A stretch of 64,000 nucleotides of DNA from Selaginella moellendorffii (Eukaryota; Plantae; Lycopodiophyta). The stretch covers positions 608,833 through 672,832 of the forward strand of contig NW_003314281.1 in assembly GCF_000143415.4 (NCBI RefSeq), in the 5' to 3' direction. Every line of letters begins with the position of its first letter. Position 1 is the first letter of the stretch. Below are positions 47,899 through 62,200 of this stretch, piece by piece. A program made the position numbers and the translations under genes. The notes under the pieces are model-generated. The model was not told the DNA's origin and did not search any database. It saw nothing but the letters and a program-made list of their open reading frames with translations.

Positions 47899-49674
47899 AG
47901 TAATCTCCAGAAAGGTTTTGCACGGCCTTGGCAATGGCCGGAGCTTTCGTTTTGCTTTGCTTTTTTTTTTCCTGTGAAGAACAAGCTGAGTGAATCTTGA
48001 CCCAAGATGAAAGTTAACTAACCTTTAAATCGCACTGTGTTTGATTTAGATGACATGGGCTTTGCAGTGACTGGTCGGTCAGTACACACTGTAAAGGCAA
48101 TCTCCGAAAGAGAAGTGTGATACACTCTTCACTTCACATGCTTATCACATCATAGTATAGAAGAATGTGAAAAAATATTTCTCATTCTTCCAAAGCTCGC
48201 TGATAGTAGTATAAATTTTTTCGAACTTTCGGTGTTGCGGTGCTCTCGATTAAAATACTCGCTACACGTGTCGGAATTATTCCTCGTGGTCCGAATTGGA
48301 TTGGACGACCGAGATTAATAGAATTTAATCGCCCAGCCAACGAAGTTTTGACAAAAGCACTTCGCTCAAAGGATCTATCGAGGTCATGGTTTTTGTTTGA
48401 TCGGCAAATATCACTGTGATCATGGGAGATATTAACGACAAGAAGACATCCATGAGAAGGTACGGTGAAGATGCCAGGGGGAACACCTGTCACGATTAGC
48501 TGGCGCCGCGTGGCCTGCGACCCAAAACCGTCACATCCATCTGACCGCTGACATCCTGCCATGTTGGCGCCGGTTCCTCCAGCGTGGATTTTGTGGGCTC
48601 GCCCTTTTTCCCCCTTTTTTCCAGAGGTCCACGGCTATGGCGGCGTGTAGCCCAGAACCCTAATTCTTGTCTTGGAGCAAGAAGGGGGGGTATTTAAGCT
48701 GCGATCCCGCCGTGCTGCCGCCGCGATTCACATTGTCGAGCATTCCAGTCCGGCGCCGCGATGGATTAAGCAGCAAGCACAGGTTAGCTTAGCCTCTAAG
48801 AAATTCTCTCGCATTCTCTTGGATTTTGATCTAATGGGGTTTTTTTTCTTGATCCAAAGCGAGGAGGGAATTGGAATCTTCGCAGGAACTGGCAACAGGT
48901 GGTTCATTGGTTTGAAAGAGCTAGCTCGGAGCGAAGAATTTGGTAAGTCATTAAATGCGCGCCTCATCCTTATGCTTTCCATGTTTGAACTGCGAATTTG
49001 GCCGAGTGTGGTCAGTCCATCCATCCCGTCTGGCCTCTTTGCTTTGGATCCAGAGCGAAAAACTCGTGTGTTTGGTTTGATCTCTTGGTTTTCTTGGTTT
49101 GATCTGTTGCTTTTCTTTTCTCCTGTGAGTGGAAGATGGGACTGGTTTGTCTCAAAGTCGGTCCTTGCTTCCAGCTTGGGTGGTTATGGAAGCCAGGAAA
49201 GAAAGAAAAAACGCGAATTGCTATACTAGCACAGCTTTTATGGAAGCATTGAATGCTATTTGAACTGAAAGCACCACACCACTTTTGCTGGGCTTGGTCT
49301 GTCCCCCCCTTCTTGCATCAGATTCCAATCCGTCTATCTCTTTCGATGGCTGGATGCGGCTCAGAAGTTCGATCGGAGAGTGGTTACCCAGTTGCTGTGA
49401 TGCATCCGCTCCTGTTTTTCGGTCGAGCAGCCAAATCGTCCCTGGGTTCCCTTCCTTTTTGGCTTTTGAGTTTGGCTTGGCTGTAGTTCTTGTCTGGCCT
49501 TTACTGTTTGTTCGGCATTATGTTCCTCTACGTTTGTCATGTTGCAACTCGTAAGTGCATTTGCGTTGCGATTGATAGGTGCCTTGTTGGGATGTGCAGA
49601 CGCTTCTGGCAGGATAAGCAGGATTCCTTCCGACAGCAACTGAAAACACAGCCTCGCAAGACCTCCCCGAGTTG

Positions 49675-51178
49675 ATGAACCCCGTCGAGAGATCCAACTC
49701 CAACACCGCCACCACCAGCAGTAGCGGGAACTTTGTGTGGCTCCCTTCACTTCAAGTTTGGAGCTTTCGCCCCGCCGAGACGTCTATCAGCTCACAGCAC
49801 GGTGGAGCCATCATGCCTGGGCTTGCACGGGCTTGTTCACAGCAGCATCAGCAGCATGAGATAACGTTCGAGCTGAGGCAACCTTCTCGGTTGCCAATGC
49901 ATCGAGAGGACGAGGAAAAGGGGGCCGAGGCAGAGCACGTCTGTCCGATCTGTCTCGGGGCGATTGAGGAGTCGAAGAACGCGTCGCTGTGGTGGTGCAT
50001 GCACAGCTTCTGCGTCGGCTGCATCGAGGAGTGGAGCAAAGTTCGCAGGTCGTGCCCGCTTTGCAAGGCCGAGTTCACAGGTTGGTACCACACCATCAAG
50101 GGGCAGAAGCGTGTCGAGAGGATTTTGCCGCCGCTCGACTACAGGCCTTCTTTGGACTACAGGCTCTCCACAGCCGAGGATTACAGGTTGTCCCTGAGCG
50201 ACTTTCGAATTTCTACATCGGACTATCGGCTGTCCACGGATGGGAGGCCCTCCAGCGTGCTTCCCGAGAGGCGGACGAGCACGAGTAGGAACCAAGCAAG
50301 GCTGGAGAGGTAAGAAAACTTTTTTTTTCCAGAGTTTGGCGTGACTTTGGCTACACTAGACTTCTTTCTCTTGTTTCCAGAGAAGTTGTCAGGAGCACTA
50401 TGACATTTCGATCCAGATTGCGGTTGCAACAACTCATGCAGTCGAGGGTCAGCAGATCGTACCGGAGATCAATCCCTTTGCCCCGGCAAAGATGTTTCAT
50501 ATCCCCCGCTGAGAGGGAGAGGCTCACTGCCGAAGTTCTTACAGAAAGAGCTCTTTCGTGGCGTACAAGGTCTGTTTGTGTGGGTGTGTGTTTTTCTTCT
50601 TTTTTTTTGTTCTTGGTTGACACTTTCCGCGTGTTGCTTGCAGCATATACAGGAAGGGTCTTCGAGCCGTTCCGTTGAATGTGAAGAAGCGTATGGAAGT
50701 AAGTTTCGTGTGTGACTGGCTTTGAAACTTTCCCCAGTTTGTTGACTCGTTATTCACAGTTAAGGCCGTATGATCTCGACGCAAAGACGAGAGCCGAGCG
50801 TCGTTTGAGACCCTGGATCACACGAGAGCTGAAAGCCATCCTGGGAGACGCAGATCACTCCGTGTTAGAGCACCTGGTTCTCAGCCACTGGTTTTCTTAC
50901 AGAATCGACGCGATAGAAGGGTCGGATGATTCTCCTGAAGGTCCGAGGAAGAGCTCGAGCCAGAGCTCGTCCGAGGCCGTTTCGCAGCTCGAGAGGTTTC
51001 TCGGTAGCAACGCATCCACGTTTTGGCACGAGTTGAGGTAAGTTTGTGTGGTTTCGCGAGTTCTTACAAGCTGGAAGTTATTTTTATGTATCGCAGATGC
51101 TATGCCGAGTGTCCATACACGATGGAAACTTATGACAGCATCGTGGTGTACGTTAAAGGCGAGCGTCAGCTATTGTAG
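49675..51178 (+). CDS. C3HC4 RING E3 ligase, TOPORS-like, multi-exon
   Basis: CPICL..CMHSFCVGCIEEWS..CPLCK; RLRPWITREL.AIL; FWHELRCYAECPYTMETYD; internal DYRLS repeats at ~50137-50240. Start ATG uncertain. Confidence 0.85.
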
Positions 51179-53109: not shown

Positions 53110-54516
53110 CTATAGCCTGTATCCCAATTCGCACTCGCATCGCTGGATGTTGTCCAGCATGAATTGCTGATCCGGGTACGTGTGGTAGCACGGCTCCATC
53201 GACTCCCTCGCCGAGCAGCCGCCCCCCGAGCACGCAAACTGGACGGGCCGCACGCCCGCCAGCCCCACCGCCGAGTATCCAAACGTTGATGGCGGGCTCG
53301 TCACCAACACGTCGCTCATTGACAACAGATAGATCTCCATCACTGCCTTTGCATCATGATCCAAGTTCCCGGTGTTTTGCACCCCTTCCACGCTTGGCTG
53401 GTGGATCGAAACCGACGAACCATCTTCCAGATCGTAGCCCAGCACCTTGTTCTTGAGCGTCTGAGAGTACTGCGCATCCAGCGACACCACAAGCACCGCC
53501 ACCTTCTTGCCCTTCCTAAGCGACGTTCTGGGAGCTCGCGCTTGGGTGATGTTTGCGAGCGCGCCTTGTTGCACCAGGCAGTCGAAGGCATCGTTGGCGA
53601 GGTCGGGTGGCGCGAACCAGACGCTAGTTCGCAGCTGGACCCCGACTAGAAGCTCGGCTTGGGCCAGGTACGCATCGTAGTATCTGGCCGTCCTGTCCCA
53701 CACCACGTCCCTAGGATGCAAGAGGTACCTCACCAGGAGATGAAAGATGGCCTCCTCCTGTGGAAACCATTCCTCGAGCTTGCTCCTGAAAACCGGGACG
53801 TTGTAGAGCGCCGGAACAAAGTACTGGTCGGACGAGAGAACAATCCACTTCGAGCTGGACTGGAGAGCTTGTTGGTGTTCTTTGCAGAAGAAGGCCTTGT
53901 CCTCGTCCCTGTAGTTGTTCACGAGATAGGCCACCACCACCTCGGGGAAATTTACACCGTGGCTGCAGTTGAGCGATCCCGCCAAGCTTCCGATCCACTT
54001 CGAGCCGTCAAACGGCGCCCCCTCGAGGTGCTTCCAGCTCGGCGGCACCAGCCAGGAGCTGGATGGAAACGGCTCGCAGAAGAGCGTGGCCAAGTTCTCC
54101 GATCCGGCGATCACCATTGTCCTGTCCGTGAGCAGCGCGTAGAGAAAAGTTGCCACCAGAGCTATCATCTTGTTGCCCATCCCCTGGCCGGCGGTGACGT
54201 AGAGGAGATAGTTGCATGTACAGTTCGAGCACTGCTCAGGGCCCGGATAGCACCTCGCGTGTAAGGCCTCGTACTCGAGGATTTTGCGGTGGAGTGACTC
54301 GGATGGCTCGAAGCTGGTCGATCGTTGGCGGCTGTAGGAAGCGTACTCGATCCTGCTTCTGCAAGTGTCGCTGATGTTGTAGTTCTTGGTGATGCGAAAA
54401 CTTGATCCCAGAGTTCGGGTCCGGGACAACTCTGCGGAGCCGGAAAAATTGTCGAAAATCCATAAGAGCACCGCCGCGGAGAAGAGGAACACGACGAACA
54501 GAAAGCTGGGGCTCAT
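53110..54516 (-). CDS. FUT: Xyloglucan/AGP alpha-1,2-fucosyltransferase (GT37), intronless type II membrane protein
   Basis: N-terminal TM helix; GMGNKM..FLYALLTDR, LFCEPFP.SSW, SDQYFVPAL, RYLLHP...W, GVQLR, AVMEIYLLS.SDVLVTS..STFGY, SMEPCYH. Confidence 0.92.
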   Translation of the reverse strand: MSPSFLFVVFLFSAAVLLWIFDNFSGSAELSRTRTLGSSFRITKNYNISDTCRSRIEYASYSRQRSTSFEPSESLHRKILEYEALHARCYPGPEQCSNCTCNYLLYVTAGQGMGNKMIALVATFLYALLTDRTMVIAGSENLATLFCEPFPSSSWLVPPSWKHLEGAPFDGSKWIGSLAGSLNCSHGVNFPEVVVAYLVNNYRDEDKAFFCKEHQQALQSSSKWIVLSSDQYFVPALYNVPVFRSKLEEWFPQEEAIFHLLVRYLLHPRDVVWDRTARYYDAYLAQAELLVGVQLRTSVWFAPPDLANDAFDCLVQQGALANITQARAPRTSLRKGKKVAVLVVSLDAQYSQTLKNKVLGYDLEDGSSVSIHQPSVEGVQNTGNLDHDAKAVMEIYLLSMSDVLVTSPPSTFGYSAVGLAGVRPVQFACSGGGCSARESMEPCYHTYPDQQFMLDNIQRCECELGYRL

Positions 54517-54594
54517 TCCTGATCCTGGAATTCTTCGAGTTCGTTGCCTACCAAACTTTAAGGCCGCGAATGAAAAGATATTTCTACTCAACTT

Positions 54595-55860
54595 GTCACC
54601 AGCAGGATGCCCTTGCAGGAAAACAAGGCCTTGACGTACTCTATGATCTGGCATCTCGAGCAAAAGGTCCGCAAGACTTTACTTCACAGTGTGCTTGGCG
54701 AGTTCTACTTCCGATCACTCAAAGAATCTCGAGGTTGCCAACGTATGAACTGTTCTCTTCCTCGCCGAATGCAGCTTGCCAACTCTTCCATCCTTCTTCT
54801 TGCCTGATGGCATAGCGAAACCTTTCTCATCATTGCGTAAACTTCGGGAAATTATTCCAGCCTTAAACGTTGAATGCCGAGTCTCCGGCTCGTGGTGGGG
54901 AAAAACATCTGTGGAAGAAATGTCCGTGAAAGGGACTTCGAACTCGAAGCCTGTGTTAACAATAGGCATTCGTCTTTAAACTTCCAAACCTGTAGATGGA
55001 GAAAACTTAGGAAAGCGTTGGAACTTTTAGAAAATCCTCACCATGGTTCTCACAGCCAGTCTTGGTGCCCCAACCATGGCACAAAAGGAGCACGACGAAC
55101 AGCAAGCTTGGGCCCTGGAAACTTGGAGCTACACAAAGTTCAAAGCGAATGAACGAAGAATTTCTCCTTGGTTGGTGATTACCAACCTGGAAAAAGAAGA
55201 GGCTCTGAGCCGAATCTAAAGGAGAAATCTTGTTGGCTCCGGATGGTAAAACACAACAAGAGATCTTCTAGATTTTGATATGAGATCTCTCCTGGGAGAC
55301 AACAAGAGATTTTCTAGCACACAAGGATTGGAGATTTTCTATTGATAATAACCGTCCAAGTAGTCTTCTGGGAGCACTCCTCTCTCGATCATCCTATCCC
55401 TCACCTTGTCGAGAGTAATCGGGTCCTGAAGAGTGTCCTTGGTAACATTGCCAACCCCATAACCTTCAATCAGATCTTTTTCGAGTGCCGCTGGACTCCA
55501 CTTCTCCACTTCAGCCCATCTTCGATCACGTACATCGCTTGATGGTATAGAGTTGTGATCTGGTACTAGCAGCTTTGCTGATGGTTCGTTTTTCTTCTTC
55601 GAGACTATAGCTGGCTCACTGTGCTTCCGCTTGTATTCCATTCGTTTGTCCAGATTTGTGACAGATCATTCGGTCTCACAGGCGATGAAAATGAGAGATA
55701 GATTTTCTTCCAGGTACCTGCAAACCTTGCGTTTCCTTCTCATCTCTCTTTGCCTCCATCTACAGTCCTAGACAATGCCAATTGTTAACAAGCACTCCAG
55801 GCTTCAGGTCCCTTTCACGGACATTTCTTCCACAGCACTAAACGTTTGCTCAATGGTAAC
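54595..55860 (-). pseudogene. Degenerate, shuffled partial duplicates of exons 3 and 4 of the lysozyme-DUF3490 gene
   Basis: Shared blocks: CTGTAGATGGAGAAA (~54990 and ~57538), GGCTCGTGGTGGG (~54887 and ~57408), AACAAGGCCTTGACGTACTCTAT (~54622 and ~56652), CCAGGTACCTGCAAACCTTGC (~55710 and ~57717). Confidence 0.8.
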
Positions 55861-55957
55861 CCAATATTTAAGTTCCAGTTTCTGCAAAAGCAACAACTAA
55901 TGGCGAAAGTCTTTCTACCTGCGGCCCAGTAGGCTGATATACCTTCTCTCGAGATCC

Positions 55958-58367
55958 TCAGAGGTAGAGGCTCACGAGCTCAGCGCTATGAGAATACCTG
56001 GCAATATTCTCTGTTAGTGTTAGTGCTCGCTCTAAGTTGATGAGCTTTTTACCTCTTTGTATCCCTCCACATAAGGTCGTAGACGATCTTTTTGAGCCGG
56101 CCTGTTGATAGCCTGCGAACCCCCCATGCCGAATAGAGCTGATGCCTCTCACTCCTGCTCGCATAGGCGCCTATGTTGATGTAAATCTTATCTCTTTGCT
56201 GCTGTATAAGCTCCTTTGCAGCCCTTCGAGACTTAGCACTCTTGTCGATGTTCTGCAACGCGTGGATCTCCCAGGCGATGCACGGTGCCTCTTTTGTAGA
56301 AAGCTGGAAGAAAAGAAGCATCAGTTCCGTAGTGCCTGGTGTATACGGGATTCACATACCTCAGATGAAGAGCTGCTCGCAGTGAGCATCTTAAACCTCA
56401 AGGAACGGGTCAGTAGATCGACGTCTTGCTCCTCCCACACTGCACAGAGCCTCTTCAAGGATGATGTCAAGCGATTGTCGCTAGAGTGACAAGTGCATGC
56501 GCCGCCAAAACTAGAGTTGCCTGTCCGGGACTCCTCGGTTCTTATGCTTGCAGCTGGAGGTGGCACTGGCATTGGTTCCGAGGAATCTAGTGACTCTTCC
56601 AGACCTCCAACTTTGTCACAAAGCTTCTCCAGCAGGATGTTCTCGCAGGAGAACAAGGCCTTGACGTACTCTATCGAAGCCGACGGGTCTGGTATCTCGA
56701 GTAGAAAGTCCGCAAGACTTAGCTTCGCAGTGTGCTTGGCGAGTTCGTCTTCTTCTTGCTCCGTCTGCCGCGGTGGAGTAGCCGCCTGTGGCAAGTCAAG
56801 CAAGTCCGCCAGCTCGGACATCAATTTCTTCTCCGCACCAGAGGAAAGAGAGGACTCCGGTCTTTCCAGCTGCTCAAGCAGCGTAAAAGTTGCATCAAAA
56901 TCAAGCGAGGCAGAGGTTTTGCGCTTTGGAGTGGAAATCGCAGTCTCAGCACCAGTCCCAGGAACGTTCTCAGCAGCGACTTGCATAGCTCGGCTGTCTG
57001 GATTCATAACCGGCGTCGCGTAGTCAGCCTGCTCTGGAACTGGAGGGAACTCAAAGCTTTCATCGTTTCTTCTGTCGACACACTCCGACAGGTCCAGTGG
57101 CAGTAGCCGAGCCAACTCCGTAAGAATTTCCTCCTCCTTTTGTTCTGATAACTCAGAAGAATAGAGAATGTCGAGGTTGCGAACGCTGGAACTACGACAT
57201 TCTACAGCTTCTTCGTGAAGATCTTGCAGCCTGTCGACTCCTCCTTCCTTCTTCTTGGCGGATGGCGTAGCGAAACCTTTCTCATCGTCGCTGGAACTTT
57301 GCTTCAAAGGTTGGTTCTCCGAGTCTAGTTCGACTGCAGACTCGGAACTCAAGAAACTGTATTCCAGTCCCAAACGTTGAATGCTCAGATCGTCTATGAG
57401 CCTCCCCGGCTCGTGGTGGGAAGAGCAAAGGTTTAAAGCTGTGGAAGAAATGTCCATGAAAGGGAGTCTTCGTACTTGAAGCCTGGCGTGCTTGTTAACA
57501 ATCGGCAATCGTCTTTCCGCAGCTAGGACTTTCAAACCTGTAGATGGAGAAACATTTAGAAAATCCTTGGCAAAGAGAGATGAAGGGGAGCCTCACCGTG
57601 CTTCAGCTTGCATTCTATTCGTTTGTCCAGATTCGTAAACTTGGAAGTTGATGGATAGATCTTACATTCGGGTCTCGCAGGCGACGGAAAGGGAGAGACG
57701 TGCTTGTGATTCTCTTCCAGGTACCTGCAAACCTTGCTCCAGTAATACGTCGTCTTCTCTCTCTGAGGACCTTGAGGACCACCTACAGTCTCAAAGAGGA
57801 AAAAGGAACCATCAGCAAAGCTGCTACGTTCCATCCATCACACAACTTCATACCATTGTGAATCTTAGCTAGAATTTCCCAGTCATGTTGTGTTAGAGCT
57901 TCCGAGCAGTACCTCATCCAATATGCCACCACTGTGTTCTCCGCGTGCTCTAAATCTCTGGACTAACTACTGTAAGAAACCAACGAAGAAAAATAGAGAA
58001 CGAAGAAAGACACATACCGGCAGCGTAGCCACGATGCTCGCTTGTTTTTCCAGGCATCGACATGGTAGTGCTCGGAGATCTGGAGAGGCCCAATGCTGGC
58101 ACCACCGTCTCCATCGGGACAATCCACCCTATTGCTCGACTCCACAAACCTGATAGCATCAAGGAGGGGACGAAGCTGTGCTCGATAAGCTCGCATCGCG
58201 TCCTCCACACTGCCCTGCCGCTTCTTCTTCCGCGACATTGTGACGCTCTTGCGGACATAGCTCGCCTGCTGCTGCTGATGCCTTGCCCGTCTCTTCTTCT
58301 TCTGCGATGACGACGGCCTGGCCGGCAGAGCGAGCCCATTCTCGGAGAATCGAGACACGCCCGGCAT
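55958..58367 (-). CDS. Invertebrate-type lysozyme (destabilase-like) domain fused to a NACK/kinesin-7 C-terminal (DUF3490-like) domain, 702 aa; exons 58367-58018, 57957-57854, 57782-57597, 57537-56360, 56303-56053, 55997-55958
   Basis: Five GT-AG introns keep one frame (2109 nt). LLDAIRFVES..DGDGGASIGPLQIS..Y..DA..SW..C..AYWMRY..IHNGGPQG..TYYWSKV, then LCAVWEEQDV.L..RS..ERHQLYSAWGV..LMWRD..HSAELV. Confidence 0.75.
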
Positions 58368-58937
58368 GGAGAGAAGCTGTGGCGTGCAAGAAATATGAAT
58401 TTTAACCTAACACGCCCAACGGTCAACATCCAGCCCTAAAATCTAGCCTAAATTTCAAGTCAAAAAGAAATAATCGCCACCGTCGGTTCTTTGACCCATC
58501 TGAGCCCTTGAATTCCTGTATAAGGAGCTTTCCGGTCTGGTGAGAAATTTGCAAGGCCTCAATGAGCTGCTCCACGCTCAATTGAAAGCGGAGGCCGACC
58601 AACTAGAGAGTGTTGCCCTGTAGAACTTAATATGCATGCAGCTCCTATAGGCTATAGCCCTCTTGGTTGGATTCGATGTAGGCTTGCTGGGCTGGGCATT
58701 TGTGGATGGATGGATTGCTCCATAGCAACAGGAGAACAGCAAAGCGGTGGAGATGCAGTGGAGATGGTGATAGCCACAGTAGCATTGAAAATCTAGCCCC
58801 CATGAGCACAATTGCCATTATAATCGCCGAACAGAATCACCAAATGGAGCTGTTCGACTGCGTTTGGTTGATTGCGTTTGGCTGACCACGTTCGGTGGTG
58901 GTCGGGATTCCTGCTGAACGCGGTCAGGACCAACAAT

Positions 58938-59215
58938 GTGCTCAACTTGGTGAAGTTGTCCACAAGATTAAGCTCCCAGAGTTCAAACCCAAGCAGGGGG
59001 TGAAGATTATTGCCAATGAGAAGGCCACCAACTCAAAGCATTCTTTCTAATTGCTGGAAATTCTTGCAAAGGATTGCTATGCCATGTTCTTGAATCTTGA
59101 TGTAATGGATTTATGCATATTATAGAGAAAGATTCTCTTGGATCTGGTTTAACAAGGTTTGGGGTGGATAAGCTGGACGATCGATTGATCAATGGGGGAC
59201 AATGTGATTCAATGT
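58938..59215 (+). pseudogene. Ubiquitin-activating enzyme E1 (UBA1)-like gene fragment, copy 1
   Basis: LGEVVHKIKLPEFKPKQGVKIIANEKAT resembles the E1 ..V..P.F.PK...KI.TDEKAT segment; isolated, no full ORF. Confidence 0.55.
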
Positions 59216-62200
59216 TTCAAAGGTGATGAGCTTTTTTTGGCGCTAGGGATGATTGGCTTGATTCTATACTTGCTGCTCAGTGCCTTTGCACATCGAAGTG
59301 CCTTGATACAACACCTCAAACATCTAGCATATCAAAACCTCAAGCATTGCAAAAAAGAGGCTCATCCTCCTCCTCGTCATTGGCCTCCTGGCCAGCAAGT
59401 GCCATGCCCAGGATCAAAGAGCTAATTGCTCTGATACTATGAAAGTAGTGGAAAGATAATGCATATAAAAAGGAAGAACATTGTATCTCAATTATATACA
59501 TATACATAAAACTATATAACATATCATCTCTACCTTTAACATTCTCTTCTCAGCCTGTTCAGAATAGTGAGACCAATGAGGATTTTAATGTTCCATGGCA
59601 AGGAGTTACAATATAAACATTCTTACAATGTTTCTTCTTTTCTCAACATGCCAAGAACAATGAGACTAGCGAGGATTTGAGCATACAAGGTGCTGGCATA
59701 GAAGTTCTAATGTAGGTGTTCCCTTGTCAATGTCTCTCAAGTGGAATGGCATTGGATGATGGGTAATTGGCAAAGCGAGGCTAAGTGTTTGGATGAAGAT
59801 TTGGGTGTTTGCAACTAGACAATATGATATTGCGAGGAGATGTGGGCTCTAAAGGGCCATGGCAGTGAAGCGTCCTTCTCAAAGAGAGAAATTGGGTACT
59901 TTGGGAAATTGTGTTCTATGATGGATATAGTATGTCGAAAGACAGCTCGATATTGGTTGTGTGGAAAATGTAGATGTGTTCCCAGATTGTTGCAAGTTCA
60001 TAGATGTTGGTATGACTTATCAATTGATTGCATATATGTATTGCTCTAGTATGATATTTTGGCACGTTGACTTCTCCAATCGGACAAACTTAAGATGCCC
60101 ATTGGGTGGGCATCGAATGGTACATGACATGGGCCATACCTCTGGGGCATGCATGTGTCATGGATGATCCATTGATGAATCTCATCAGCATGTCAAGGAT
60201 TTAGCGAGGAGTCAAGTAAGTTTTAGTATGCTCTCCTTTGAAGCCACTTTAATTTCTATAGTGTGGCAGCCAATTGTTGCAATAGTGAAATTAGTTTGGA
60301 TTTTAATGGTAACTAGAATTGTTTGAGCCTAAGATTGTATCAATTAATATATTTTTACTCCAACCCAAATCATTTCATTCCTATCATAATCAAGTGTAGT
60401 GCTGAAAGATGAACAAAGTGTGGTGACTCTATTGAGCTACAATTTCAACTCTTCTTCAATTAGTAAGAGTGAAGATGGAGAAAGCAACATTTTAGTAGTG
60501 AGTAAATAAATTTTTTAAATATGCAAAACTTTAATAATTTTTTACAATTAAGGGAATTTACTATTATGTTATCATGCAAATCATGCAGCCAACAATTTAT
60601 ATATTGGTGGTCCATTAAAATTGGGGGTGGGTGTATACTATAGGATTCAGATAGAGGAAGTCCTTCACCACATTTGGACCATGAATTGTGTTGGGACAAA
60701 TTAGGGGTCTTGTTATCAAGTAATTAGTTAGTGTTCTTTTCATTCAAATTATAGGCTATGACAATGTTCATTCCTATATAACCAATAGTAAATTCTAATT
60801 TCTCCTATGACTATATGAGCACATGTTGACTATGTGGGGTAATGGGTTGAATTTATATTGAAGATGTTGCAATTAATATAGATTGGTAGCCATAAATGGA
60901 ACTCTAATGAATCTATCACAAAATGGTGGAGTGATAGTTAGAGTTGCTTGACAAGCCACATATTCTTACCTTTGATTACCTCATAAATCCACCACTTCTA
61001 GTTGTCAGTAAATCCTAATCTAAGAACCAAGCACCTCTGGAGTTATCTCATATTGATCATCTAAAACACCTAAAGTAGTGGCAAAATTGTAAGTAGCCAC
61101 TCTCCCCATTGCACTTTGGTTGTTAAACAGAATTTTCCAAATAATTGCTACCATGCAATGGTTAACGACTTCTTCATAGTCAAACTTGATGTCCACCAGC
61201 CTTGAGGGTCCATTAATCTTGATATCCACCAGCCAGAGTGTAATCCATGGCCTTGATGAAGCAAGAGTTGCTTTTGGTGATGAGTGAAGGATGTTTTGTC
61301 GTCATTGGTGAGTAATGGCTTTTATTCAATAAATCATAGGGCAAGTCATTCAACAAGTTTGTGGAGACCACAAGCAAGTAAATACTCCAAACCTTTTATA
61401 TTAGCTGTAAATAATGAATCTTTGCTCGTGAAAAACTATTATAGGGTTTGAGTTTTATGTCAAAGATAAAAGTTAAATGGCTAATATATATAAATTGCAT
61501 TGGCAAAAGTTTTCTTTATAAGCCCAACCTTCTAGGCTACATACTTATCTTGTAGAGTCCTTTGGACTTACATGTAGTATTGTGGGTAGAGTTGTATCTT
61601 CTGAAGTGGCCAAAGACACTTATTATTGTGTTGCATGCTAGAAACTTTCTCAGTGTAATATGTTTTTATATGTTTTGAAATATATATACCAAAGGTGGTG
61701 ACATATGTACTACATTTGCACTAGCAAAAGCTAAAAGGAGATTATAACACATTTGAGTGAACACGTACAGAACATCTAGCAAATCAATAGAAAACACACA
61801 AAGAGAATGAATGTACTCAAGAGCATGTCCAGGTTTGTCTTTCTTGACCTTCTTCAGTTTGTAACACTTGTAGGCATTCATACAAGTATAGAGATGATGC
61901 AAAATATGTATCACTTGTTCAATCAAGAATCAAAATAAGTATTTATGGTGATTTTACTCTTATAATTGTGTAGATTTTACACTTTGGATCAGATTGGATA
62001 CATTGGGTGCTATGTTTCTAGGCATTAACTTTGCTTTTAATATGGTCTTTATTCAATTGACCACCTCATAATTCACACAAATCAGGTGACTAATCTATGA
62101 CTTGTGTTATGGTTAACTTCAAAAATGTTTTACAATGACATGTCATTTGGATATTCAAGAGCTTTGGCCTCTGGTTGGATCAAGCCCATTAAATTTAAGA

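What the first reader, a model, noticed from the sequence alone, without database searches (positions are those of the whole stretch)
55958..58367. Plant gene fusing an invertebrate-type lysozyme/destabilase domain to a motor-less NACK kinesin tail
Seen: the ORF track shows only fragments, but five canonical GT-AG introns join six exons into a stop-free 702-aa protein. Residues ~65-180 read LLDAIRFVES-x-DGDGGASIGPLQIS-x-ASWLRC-x-VVAYWMRY-x-KIHNGGPQG-x-TYYWSKV. Known: this is the i-type lysozyme/destabilase signature. Candidates for the muramidase Glu (VES) and Asp and the isopeptidase Ser (SW) and His (HNGGP) are all present. The C-terminal ~150 aa follow the NACK1/HINKEL kinesin-7 tail pattern (DUF3490). 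There is no signal peptide, but a basic N-terminus (KKKRR, RKKKR). Inference: an intracellular peptidoglycan hydrolase or isopeptidase joined to a cytokinesis-kinesin module. It could act on plastid peptidoglycan, which non-seed plants retain, or on bacteria. I know of no description of this architecture.
Basis: partly seen in the sequence, partly recalled or inferred. Interest (0 to 1): 0.92.

Follow-up and report, generated by a model that had tools for sequence, protein, structure and literature searches.

The report
Spikemoss lysozyme fused to kinesin tail
This is a real, expressed spikemoss (Selaginella) gene joining a cysteine-poor lysozyme domain to the tail domain of plant cytokinesis kinesins; the combination is old and unstudied, is shared from conjugating green algae to ferns, and has an untested function.

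Summary
Six exons on the minus strand (58367-55958), joined at five GT-AG introns, give a stop-free 702-aa protein. Assembled transcript contigs from four studies skip all five introns, including the critical exon 3/exon 4 joint. The genome is Selaginella moellendorffii or a very close relative: the product is 98% identical to "uncharacterized protein LOC9657483".

Both domain calls hold.
- **Lysozyme domain (residues 58-179):** it passes Pfam Destabilase when scanned alone, folds like leech destabilase and clam i-type lysozymes, and keeps the invariant Glu, Asp and His.
- **Tail (last 140 residues):** it is a DUF3490 domain. Pfam scores it just below threshold in Selaginella and above threshold in the moss orthologue. 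The predicted fold matches streptophyte kinesins that carry DUF3490 (TM 0.71).

- The fusion is ancient: Spirogloea, mosses and ferns share it, usually with calmodulin-binding IQ motifs, which are degenerate in Selaginella.
- The nearest relatives of the lysozyme domain are Planctomycetota and mobile-element proteins (44-53% identity), not animal ones (about 30%).
- Selaginella also carries decayed and frameshifted copies.

There is no signal peptide, no transmembrane segment and few cysteines, so the protein is probably intracellular. A role in plastid peptidoglycan fits the family's distribution but has a topology problem and is untested. I found no paper on this family. The scan had already noted related lysozyme genes in this genome.

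The parts
55958..58367 (-). Whole coding region: six exons, five GT-AG introns, 702 aa plus stop
   Evidence: Splice model and translation. 98% identical to P0001/LOC9657483. All introns are skipped in transcript contigs.
58018..58367 (-). Exon 1: basic N-terminus (KKKRR at 58287-58301, RKKKR at 58218-58232, polyQ) and the first part of the lysozyme domain, including catalytic Glu76 (VES) and invariant Asp87 (GDGG) and Asp104
   Evidence: Contigs reach 58413, so the 5' UTR is at least 46 nt.
57854..57957 (-). Exon 2: middle of the lysozyme domain, up to His150-Asn-Gly
   Evidence: Introns 1 and 2 are skipped in all four runs. The same intron positions occur in L003.
57597..57782 (-). Exon 3: end of the lysozyme domain (GPQG ... 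YYW with invariant Trp166; domain ends near 57700), then a linker
57700..58196 (-). Destabilase-like lysozyme domain, model residues 58-179, interrupted by introns 1 and 2
   Evidence: Pfam PF05497 29.5 bits (cut-off 26.2) on the excised domain. PDB sequence hits 8bbu 9e-9 and 3ab6 1e-7. AF2 pLDDT 85.9 with Foldseek top hits 8bbu, 4pj2 and 3ab6, TM by target 0.70.
57538..57596 (-). Intron 3, the junction between the lysozyme part and the tail part
   Evidence: Skipped in an X7 contig (79 nt on the shorter side). Loose ends in X1, X4 and X6 read into the partner exon.
56360..57537 (-). Exon 4: degenerate IQ-like motif (57467-57499, VNKHARLQVRR), long low-complexity acidic/Ser-rich middle with a conserved 'LLY..(D/E)(I/L)S..(E/K)E..(I/L)(L/F).E' motif, and the start of the DUF3490-like domain (from about 56491)
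   Evidence: Alignment with orthologues, regex. No Pfam family on the exon alone.
55958..56491 (-). DUF3490-like C-terminal domain, model residues 563-702, interrupted by introns 4 and 5, ending at the stop codon
   Evidence: PF11995 21.5 bits, E 2e-4, in register. All 10 orthologous tails have DUF3490 as top hit; the moss tail scores 27.1 bits, above the cut-off of 25. AF2 pLDDT 85.9, seven helices. TM 0.71 over 133 of 140 residues to an Atlas cluster of kinesins with PF11995.
54596..55900 (.). Decayed, rearranged partial copy of the same gene downstream (exon 3 and exon 4 fragments, direct and inverted)
   Evidence: the repeat finder families D1-D9 and I1-I4. tblastn of the model. Partly covered by X4 contigs.

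Best explanation
The locus is an intact, transcribed member of an old streptophyte gene family. Its product is a soluble protein without a signal peptide and therefore probably intracellular. It has three parts:
- An N-terminal, cysteine-poor lysozyme domain of the Destabilase (i-type) fold. It belongs to a green-lineage clade that nests among bacterial sequences, mostly Planctomycetota and mobile-element ones.
- A middle region that carries calmodulin-binding IQ motifs in orthologues. In Selaginella only a degenerate remnant is left.
- A C-terminal seven-helix DUF3490 domain, the same domain that ends NACK-type kinesin-7 motors.

Shown here: the gene structure, the single spliced transcript, both domain identities, conservation of the catalytic-type residues (Glu76, Asp87, His150, plus Asp104 and Trp166), and the age of the fusion (at least the common ancestor of Zygnematophyceae and land plants).

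Inferred: the lysozyme domain is an active hydrolase of a GlcNAc-containing glycan (peptidoglycan or chitin-like). The reasons are that its acid/base residues are invariant and that its sister subfamily is fused to two LysM glycan-binding modules.

Also inferred: the DUF3490 domain is a docking module that places the enzyme at whatever partner or site kinesin-7 tails bind, with Ca2+/calmodulin control in the lineages that keep IQ motifs.

The substrate's origin (plastid wall, bacteria, or another glycan or isopeptide) is not settled.
For: - **Gene and transcript:**
- **Organism and allele:**
- **Lysozyme domain:** Pfam above cut-off on the excised domain. PDB sequence hits are to destabilase and clam lysozymes. 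The AF2 model has pLDDT 85.9, and its Foldseek top six hits are all i-type lysozymes. E29, D40, D57, H103 and W119 are invariant in 46 relatives.
- **Tail:** ten of ten orthologous tails hit DUF3490 first and in register, one of them above cut-off. The fold matches a kinesin/DUF3490 cluster at TM 0.71.
- **Same architecture elsewhere:** Spirogloea (7 IQ stretches), Adiantum, Ceratopteris, Physcomitrium, Ceratodon and Sphagnum.
- **Single green-lineage clade (SH-aLRT 98) inside bacterial diversity:**
- **LysM-fused sister subfamily:**
- **No hydrophobic segment or signal peptide:**. Algal homologues start directly with the domain, which leaves no room for a transit peptide.
Against: - No enzymatic, localisation or genetic data exist for any member.
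- On the full-length protein Pfam does not report Destabilase at all, and the Selaginella tail is below the DUF3490 cut-off.
- The catalytic Asp of animal enzymes aligns one residue away from the invariant Asp.
- The moss and Cryptomeria lysozyme domains are divergent in the substrate-binding GPLQI motif and sit on long branches, so activity may be lost in some lineages.
- The Selaginella protein is much shorter than its orthologues and has lost a recognisable IQ motif. Close copies in the same genome are decaying.
- What DUF3490 binds is unknown, so 'docking module' is an analogy.
- The runs are only guessed to be RNA. Their intron-less joints are what argue that they are.
Confidence: 0.75

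Rival explanations
1. Plastid-wall enzyme. The family hydrolyses the peptidoglycan layer that non-angiosperm green plants keep around plastids. The tail and IQ region time or position it at plastid division.
For: - Named members come only from lineages that retain, or are reported to retain, plastid peptidoglycan: chlorophyte picoalgae, Mesostigma, Chlorokybus, Closterium, Spirogloea, liverworts, mosses, Selaginella, ferns and a conifer.
- No angiosperm appears among the eukaryote-type hits in the best 150 of a search of 1.84 billion proteins.
- Plastid peptidoglycan is documented in moss, ferns, Closterium and Picea (PMC9434261, PMC3398972, PMC12681378).
- The sister subfamily carries LysM domains.
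Against: - No transit peptide. Algal homologues begin directly with the catalytic domain and some end in a tail-anchor-like segment, so the domain should face the cytosol, while the wall lies between the envelope membranes.
- The Selaginella N-terminus looks like a nuclear localisation signal rather than a transit peptide.
- Absence from angiosperms rests on the names of hits I could look up, not on a targeted search.
- A trebouxiophyte (Myrmecia) also has a member.
Confidence: 0.2
2. Intracellular defence or glycan-turnover enzyme. It would be a cytosolic or nuclear hydrolase of bacterial peptidoglycan fragments or chitin oligomers, or an isopeptidase like destabilase, unrelated to plastids.
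For: - Cytosol-type features: no signal peptide, few cysteines.
- The nearest relatives are bacterial wall enzymes carrying signal peptides.
- The His equivalent to destabilase His112 is invariant and the Ser51 equivalent is present.
- LysM sister family.
Against: - The Ser is conserved in only 32 of 46 relatives.
- No expression link to infection was examined.
- This reading does not explain the kinesin-type tail or the IQ motifs.
Confidence: 0.2
3. Non-catalytic scaffold. The lysozyme fold has become a binding module (pseudoenzyme) and the protein acts only as an adaptor or competitor for partners of kinesin-7 tails.
For: - The moss and Cryptomeria domains have degenerate GPLQI motifs and long branches.
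- Over-expressed kinesin-7 tails can titrate partners in Arabidopsis (PMC10538751, for KIN7.3; I did not test whether that tail is a DUF3490 domain).
Against: Glu, two Asp, His and Trp are invariant in 46 sequences, including the Selaginella copy, and across the green clade. Such conservation is not expected for a dead site.
Confidence: 0.12
4. Artefact or recent accident. Either two adjacent genes were wrongly joined, or a Selaginella-specific chimera arose by rearrangement or transposon capture, as the repeated fragments downstream might suggest.
For: - Fragmentary direct and inverted copies of exon 3 and exon 4 lie at 54596-55900.
- Frameshifted copies are transcribed.
- The old JGI models of the family are inconsistent (P0002, P0057).
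Against: - Transcript contigs cross the junction in four studies.
- The same N-to-C architecture occurs in a zygnematophyte alga, mosses and ferns, with the tail at the extreme C-terminus each time.
Confidence: 0.02

Closest known systems
Leech destabilase and bivalve i-type lysozymes (PF05497; PDB 8bbu, 3ab6, 4pj2, 2dqa)
   Same: - Same fold (Foldseek probability 1.00, TM by target about 0.70).
- About 30% identity.
- The catalytic Glu aligns; there is an Asp in the same loop.
- The HNGGP histidine and the YW motif are conserved.
   Different: - Animal enzymes are small, secreted and locked by many disulfides. This domain has 4 non-framework cysteines and no signal peptide.
- It is split by two introns and sits at the N-terminus of a 702-aa multi-domain protein.
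- The Asp is offset by one residue.
Small destabilase-like proteins of Planctomycetota MAGs and a mobile-element-like metagenome contig (e.g. P0003, loci L004-L044)
   Same: - Closest sequence relatives: 44-53% identity.
- The same motifs (VES, PDGDGG.SIGP.QI, HNGGP, YW).
- Also cysteine-poor.
   Different: - The bacterial proteins are 120-200 aa, single-domain, with an N-terminal hydrophobic signal-like segment.
- The plant clade has a diagnostic YH.DAW motif and no signal peptide.
NACK1/HINKEL-type kinesin-7 C-terminal domain (PF11995, DUF3490)
   Same: - The last 140 residues give DUF3490 as the only Pfam hit, in register.
- The predicted seven-helix fold superposes on the tail of 959-aa streptophyte kinesins (TM 0.71, 133 residues).
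   Different: - No motor, neck or long coiled coil.
- The score is below the Pfam cut-off in Selaginella.
- The function of DUF3490 itself is unknown, and it has no solved structural relative.
LysM-LysM-lysozyme proteins of green algae, liverworts and Selaginella (P0019/LOC9662026, P0016; earlier scan note s1-410669)
   Same: - Same green-lineage clade of the lysozyme domain (SH-aLRT 98).
- The same YH.DAW motif.
- No signal peptide.
   Different: The partner domains are two N-terminal LysM modules instead of a C-terminal IQ/DUF3490 region. The two form separate subclades.
Short homologues of Mesostigma and Chlorokybus (P0011, P0012, P0014)
   Same: - They group with the tail family in the tree.
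- The lysozyme domain is at the very N-terminus.
   Different: They are about 200 aa and end in a hydrophobic, tail-anchor-like segment instead of IQ/DUF3490. They may show the state before the fusion.

Membership tests
Destabilase / i-type lysozyme (PF05497) | Profile score at or above Pfam's gathering cut-off | tested here: met
   The excised domain (P0001:50-215, identical to the window apart from one K/R in the linker after the domain) scores 29.5 bits against a cut-off of 26.2, E 9.5e-7. Nothing is reported on the full-length protein or on single exons.
Destabilase / i-type lysozyme (PF05497) | Lysozyme-like fold closest to solved i-type lysozymes | tested here: met
   The AF2 model has pLDDT 85.9. 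The Foldseek top six hits are destabilase and clam lysozymes, TM by target 0.65-0.71. Lytic transglycosylases, g-type lysozymes and GH134 follow only at E above 0.2.
Destabilase / i-type lysozyme (PF05497) | Catalytic Glu and Asp of the muramidase site (destabilase Glu34/Asp46) | tested here: inconclusive
   The Glu aligns and is invariant (46 of 46). The invariant Asp (model Asp87) aligns one residue after Asp46, and a second Asp (Asp85) lies one residue before it. The geometry was not examined.
Destabilase / i-type lysozyme (PF05497) | Secreted, disulfide-rich framework of animal members | tested here: not met
   No signal peptide. There are four cysteines in the domain, and relatives have 0-6. 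The many-disulfide framework of animal members is from established knowledge of the family.
Destabilase / i-type lysozyme (PF05497) | Muramidase and/or isopeptidase activity | not testable with these tools
   Needs an enzyme assay.
DUF3490 (PF11995) | Profile score at or above the gathering cut-off | tested here: inconclusive
   The Selaginella tail scores 21.5 bits, below 25. The orthologous moss tail scores 27.1 bits over profile positions 9-137 of 161. All ten orthologous tails have DUF3490 as best hit, in register.
DUF3490 (PF11995) | Same fold as the domain in kinesins | tested here: met
   TM 0.71 by query, 133 of 140 residues, rmsd 3.3, to an ESM-Atlas cluster in which 95% of members carry PF11995 and 100% a kinesin motor. 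The next rows have TM of 0.41 or less. Both sides are predicted models.
Kinesin-7 (NACK1/HINKEL) | N-terminal kinesin motor domain | tested here: not met
   No PF00225 hit on P0001 or on any exon. The N-terminus is the lysozyme domain.
IQ calmodulin-binding motif (PF00612) | IQxxxRGxxxR-type motif recognised by the profile | tested here: not met
   No hit in the Selaginella protein. The aligned remnant VNKHARLQVRR keeps the two Arg but has Asn in place of Gln. Orthologues do meet the feature: Spirogloea 7 stretches, ferns 1-2, moss 1.
Soluble lytic transglycosylase (SLT, PF01464) | Profile hit and closest fold | tested here: not met
   Considered because of the ES / G.LQI / NGG motif pattern. 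There is no Pfam hit. MltC, MltE and Slt appear only at Foldseek E of 0.3 or more.

The most novel reading that the evidence does not exclude
This family could be the missing cytosol-side, calmodulin-gated wall-splitting or wall-sensing enzyme of peptidoglycan-bearing plastids. In that reading the kinesin-7-type DUF3490 tail brings it to the division machinery, and the family was lost together with the plastid wall in flowering plants.
Probability: 0.12. Interest if true: 0.85.

Novelty: new variant of a known kind. Interest (0 to 1): 0.62.

Why it matters
Both domains belong to known families, but their combination is not in the searched literature. It is also not visible in routine annotation. 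The stored Pfam fields show no domain for the Selaginella protein and only IQ for the moss one. The sources name these proteins only 'uncharacterized protein' or, in UniRef, 'lysozyme'.

- It shows that the 'invertebrate' lysozyme fold has a deep, intron-bearing, apparently intracellular lineage in green plants.
- It shows that the enigmatic tail domain of NACK-type kinesins can exist without a motor. That gives a second, independent handle on what DUF3490 binds.
- Its distribution parallels plastid peptidoglycan, so it is a cheap, testable candidate for wall remodelling or sensing in moss, where knock-outs are routine.

If the enzyme proves to be cytosolic and active, its substrate would itself be a new question.

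Tried and rejected
- **Single exons against Pfam:** only a weak DUF3490 hit on exon 5 and no lysozyme hit. The domain must be scanned spliced.
- **TE or rearrangement chimera:** suggested by direct and inverted copies of exons 3 and 4 downstream. Rejected because algae, mosses and ferns share the architecture.
- **ORF 55339-55641 as an ancestral C-terminus:** no Pfam family and no Atlas lead. Left unexplained.
- **SLT or goose-type lysozyme assignment:** rejected.
- **Fetching kinesin tails for a profile-profile test:** the word-indexed search with the moss tail returned only moss orthologues (one search was a parameter slip). The Atlas feature search gave nothing. The question was settled by structure instead.
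- **Tail against the PDB:** Foldseek found nothing, and VIA-align gave only generic helical hairpins with Z under 7.
- **Prokaryote genome scan with the wide alignment:** failed for lack of a conserved block. A narrower alignment worked. Its search pattern (PDGD..G) may bias the result toward Planctomycetota.
- **PHROGs on the contig of the closest non-plant relative:** only a methyltransferase-like and a RusA-like hit, so 'phage' is no more than 'mobile-element-like'.
- **Literature searches by locus names and by concepts:** nothing relevant.
Full report
**1. The observation**

The region was read on the minus strand and translated in three frames. Six in-frame blocks are joined by five introns, each beginning GT and ending AG. 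The exons are 58367-58018, 57957-57854, 57782-57597, 57537-56360, 56303-56053 and 55997-55958. The spliced CDS is 2109 nt and encodes 702 residues plus a stop. The ATG at 58367 follows an in-frame stop.

**2. Identity of the genome and of the gene**

A search with exon 4 found P0001, a 704-aa protein of Selaginella moellendorffii named only 'uncharacterized protein LOC9657483'. It aligns end to end with the model. There are 10 substitutions and a two-residue polyQ indel. None of these falls in the lysozyme core or in the last 140 residues. A second hit, P0002 (SELMODRAFT_413249, 441 aa, named 'lysozyme' in UniRef), is a patched model of a copy with deletions and frameshifts.

**3. Is the fusion transcribed?**

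Contigs of four runs from four studies were laid on 54300-59300. Joints with CT..AC ends on the plus strand (GT..AG on the minus strand) remove introns 1, 2 and 4 in all four runs. Intron 5 is removed in three runs.

The critical intron 3 is removed in an X7 contig with 79 nt on its shorter side. In X1, X4 and X6, contigs ending at the exon borders carry loose ends of 10 and 17 nt. These are the first bases of the partner exon.

The runs are only guessed to be RNA, but intron-less joints at canonical sites are what cDNA gives. An X1 contig matches the window's exons 2-3 without a single difference.

Some contigs instead carry disabling changes:
- a 25-nt deletion at 56078
- single-base insertions at 56543 and 57052
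- a 311-nt skip at 57127-57439

These changes match P0002's altered reading. A disabled paralogue or allele is therefore transcribed as well.

**4. The N-terminal domain**

Single exons give no lysozyme hit. The full-length protein gives none either, but the excised domain passes Pfam Destabilase (29.5 bits against a cut-off of 26.2). It also hits leech destabilase (8bbu, 9e-9) and clam i-type lysozymes (3ab6, 4pj2, 2dqa) in the PDB sequence search.

An AlphaFold model built on a 46-sequence alignment has pLDDT 85.9. Foldseek then ranks exactly those structures first, with TM by target 0.65-0.71 and probability 1.00.

Five residues are invariant in the alignment: Glu76, Asp87, Asp104, His150 and Trp166 in model numbering.
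- Glu76 aligns with the catalytic Glu of the clam enzyme.
- Asp87 lies one position after destabilase Asp46.
- His150 aligns with His112, and Ser91 with Ser51. These are the residues that PMC10126035 proposes for isopeptidase activity.
- Ser91 is conserved in only 32 of 46 sequences.

The domain has four cysteines, and relatives have 0-6. By established knowledge, animal i-type lysozymes have a many-disulfide framework.

**5. Relatives of the lysozyme domain**

An exhaustive phmmer search of 1.84 billion representatives gave 1470 hits. The best hits are long streptophyte proteins with the domain near the N-terminus:
- Spirogloea, 1356 aa
- Closterium, 670 and 511 aa
- Adiantum, 935 aa
- Ceratopteris, 943 aa
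- Cryptomeria, 589 aa
- Physcomitrium, 1360-1378 aa

Other hits include:
- Short proteins of Mesostigma and Chlorokybus.
- A second Selaginella family of 343 aa that carries two LysM domains.
- Members of that LysM subfamily from Riccia, Picocystis, Chloropicon, Myrmecia and marine metagenomes.

The remaining hits are 120-200-aa proteins. A scan of prokaryote genomes assigned 41 such loci almost entirely to Planctomycetota MAGs, at 44-53% identity. The search pattern may favour that phylum. The closest single non-plant protein (P0003, 53% identity) lies on a 77-kb contig of small co-directional genes. That contig has RusA-like and methyltransferase-like hits, so it looks like a mobile element.

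In a maximum-likelihood tree of 135 domains, all green-lineage sequences form one clade (SH-aLRT 98) nested among the bacterial ones. The clade shares a YH.DAW motif. That motif is absent from the bacterial hits ranked 121-153. No angiosperm is among the named members. This is suggestive, not proof of absence.

**6. The C-terminal domain**

The Selaginella tail gives DUF3490 as its only Pfam hit (21.5 bits, cut-off 25, profile positions 62-137). Ten orthologous tails from mosses, ferns, Spirogloea and an unnamed alga all give DUF3490 as best hit in the same register. The Physcomitrium tail is above cut-off (27.1 bits, positions 9-137).

A 13-sequence tail alignment has 11 invariant columns. 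It yields a confident seven-helix model (pLDDT 85.9, pTM 0.77). In the ESM Atlas, its best structural match covers 133 of 140 residues at TM 0.71. That match is a cluster of 959-aa streptophyte proteins, all with a kinesin motor and 95% with PF11995. The next rows have TM of 0.41 or less. The PDB holds nothing similar. The tail is therefore a genuine motor-less DUF3490 domain.

**7. The middle region**

Orthologues carry IQ motifs: Spirogloea has seven matched stretches, ferns one or two, and moss one. In Selaginella the aligned segment reads VNKHARLQVRR. It keeps the two arginines but not the Gln, and it is not recognised by the profile. A second short motif further on is shared with ferns, Cryptomeria and moss.

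**8. Location in the cell**

There is no hydrophobic segment anywhere (maximum 19-residue hydropathy 0.74), so there is no signal peptide or membrane span. The first 57 residues are very basic and contain two Lys/Arg runs, which looks more like a nuclear signal than a transit peptide.

N-termini are not conserved among orthologues. In Spirogloea and Chlorokybus the catalytic domain begins within the first 10-30 residues, which leaves no room for a transit peptide. The short Mesostigma and Chlorokybus proteins end in a hydrophobic segment, like tail-anchored proteins. A cytosol-facing lysozyme domain therefore seems ancestral.

**9. Interpretation**

- **Shown:** a real gene, one transcript, two correctly named domains, and an ancient fusion.
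- **Inferred:** an active GlcNAc-glycan hydrolase (invariant acid residues; LysM-fused sister family) held at a partner or site by a kinesin-7-type tail, with calmodulin control where IQ motifs persist.

In Arabidopsis, C-terminal tails of KIN7.3-clade kinesins bind separase and SFH8, and they titrate partners when over-expressed (PMC10538751). I did not test whether those tails are DUF3490 domains, so this is only an analogy.

The plastid-peptidoglycan idea fits the distribution of the family and the literature on plastid walls (PMC9434261, PMC3398972, PMC12681378). It conflicts with the cytosolic topology.

**10. Surroundings**

Between this gene and a xyloglucan fucosyltransferase ORF (53110-54663, PF03254, 3e-84) lies a decayed, rearranged partial copy of exons 3-4 at 54596-55900. 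Earlier notes of this scan report two related items in the same genome:
- another lysozyme-like domain 4.3 kb beyond the window's end
- a LysM-lysozyme gene elsewhere

Together with the frameshifted transcribed copy, this shows a small, turning-over gene cluster in Selaginella.

**11. Novelty**

No paper in the searched library links Destabilase or i-type lysozymes to plants, or DUF3490 to anything but kinesins. None mentions these loci. Databases hold the proteins only as 'uncharacterized' or auto-named 'lysozyme'. I rate it a new variant of known kinds, of moderate to high interest because it is easily testable in moss.

Noticed in passing
window 54596-55900: Decayed, rearranged partial copy of the same gene: exon 4 pieces in direct orientation at 54596-55014, exon 3 pieces at 55615-55730, and inverted pieces at 55567-55614 and 55776-55851. 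Contigs of run X4 cover 55397-55832.
   Followed up: partly
window 56078, 56543, 57052, 57127-57439 (seen in contigs, not in the window): Transcript contigs of several runs carry a 25-nt deletion, two 1-nt insertions and a 311-nt deletion relative to the window. This matches the frameshifted database model P0002 (SELMODRAFT_413249), so a disabled paralogue or allele is transcribed.
   Followed up: partly
window 55339-55641 (-): A 100-aa ORF begins inside a diverged copy of exon 3 (…KRMEYKRKH…) and runs on into unrelated sequence. It has no Pfam family and no Atlas lead. It may be a remnant of another C-terminus or may be noise.
   Followed up: partly
window 53110-54663 (-): Long ORF encoding a xyloglucan fucosyltransferase (PF03254, E 3e-84). 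Its first ~20 codons overlap the decayed gene copy, so the true start is probably the internal Met before the hydrophobic anchor.
   Followed up: partly
window 58265 and model residues 31-34: PolyQ length polymorphism: four Gln in the window, six in P0001, and a CTGCTG insertion in contigs of X4 and X6.
   Followed up: no
L003:1018-1769 (Logan contig of ERR9963772): Orthologous lysozyme exons in another, unidentified plant, 52-68% identical, with introns at the same two positions. The contig ends before any tail could be seen.
   Followed up: partly
P0011, P0012, P0014 (Mesostigma, Chlorokybus): Short homologues start directly with the lysozyme domain and end in a hydrophobic segment (19-residue hydropathy 1.84, 1.39, 1.35). 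This is a tail-anchor-like organisation that may precede the IQ/DUF3490 fusion.
   Followed up: partly
L001:1-12411 (JGI metagenome contig of 77 kb): The closest non-plant relative of the lysozyme domain (P0003, 53% identity, lipoprotein-like signal) sits among many small co-directional genes. These include a RusA-like resolvase and a DNA-methyltransferase-like protein, so the context looks like a mobile element or phage.
   Followed up: partly
window 49672-50313 (+): ORF with a RING-finger-like Cys/His pattern (CPICL…C.H.FC..C…CPLC). Not examined.
   Followed up: no
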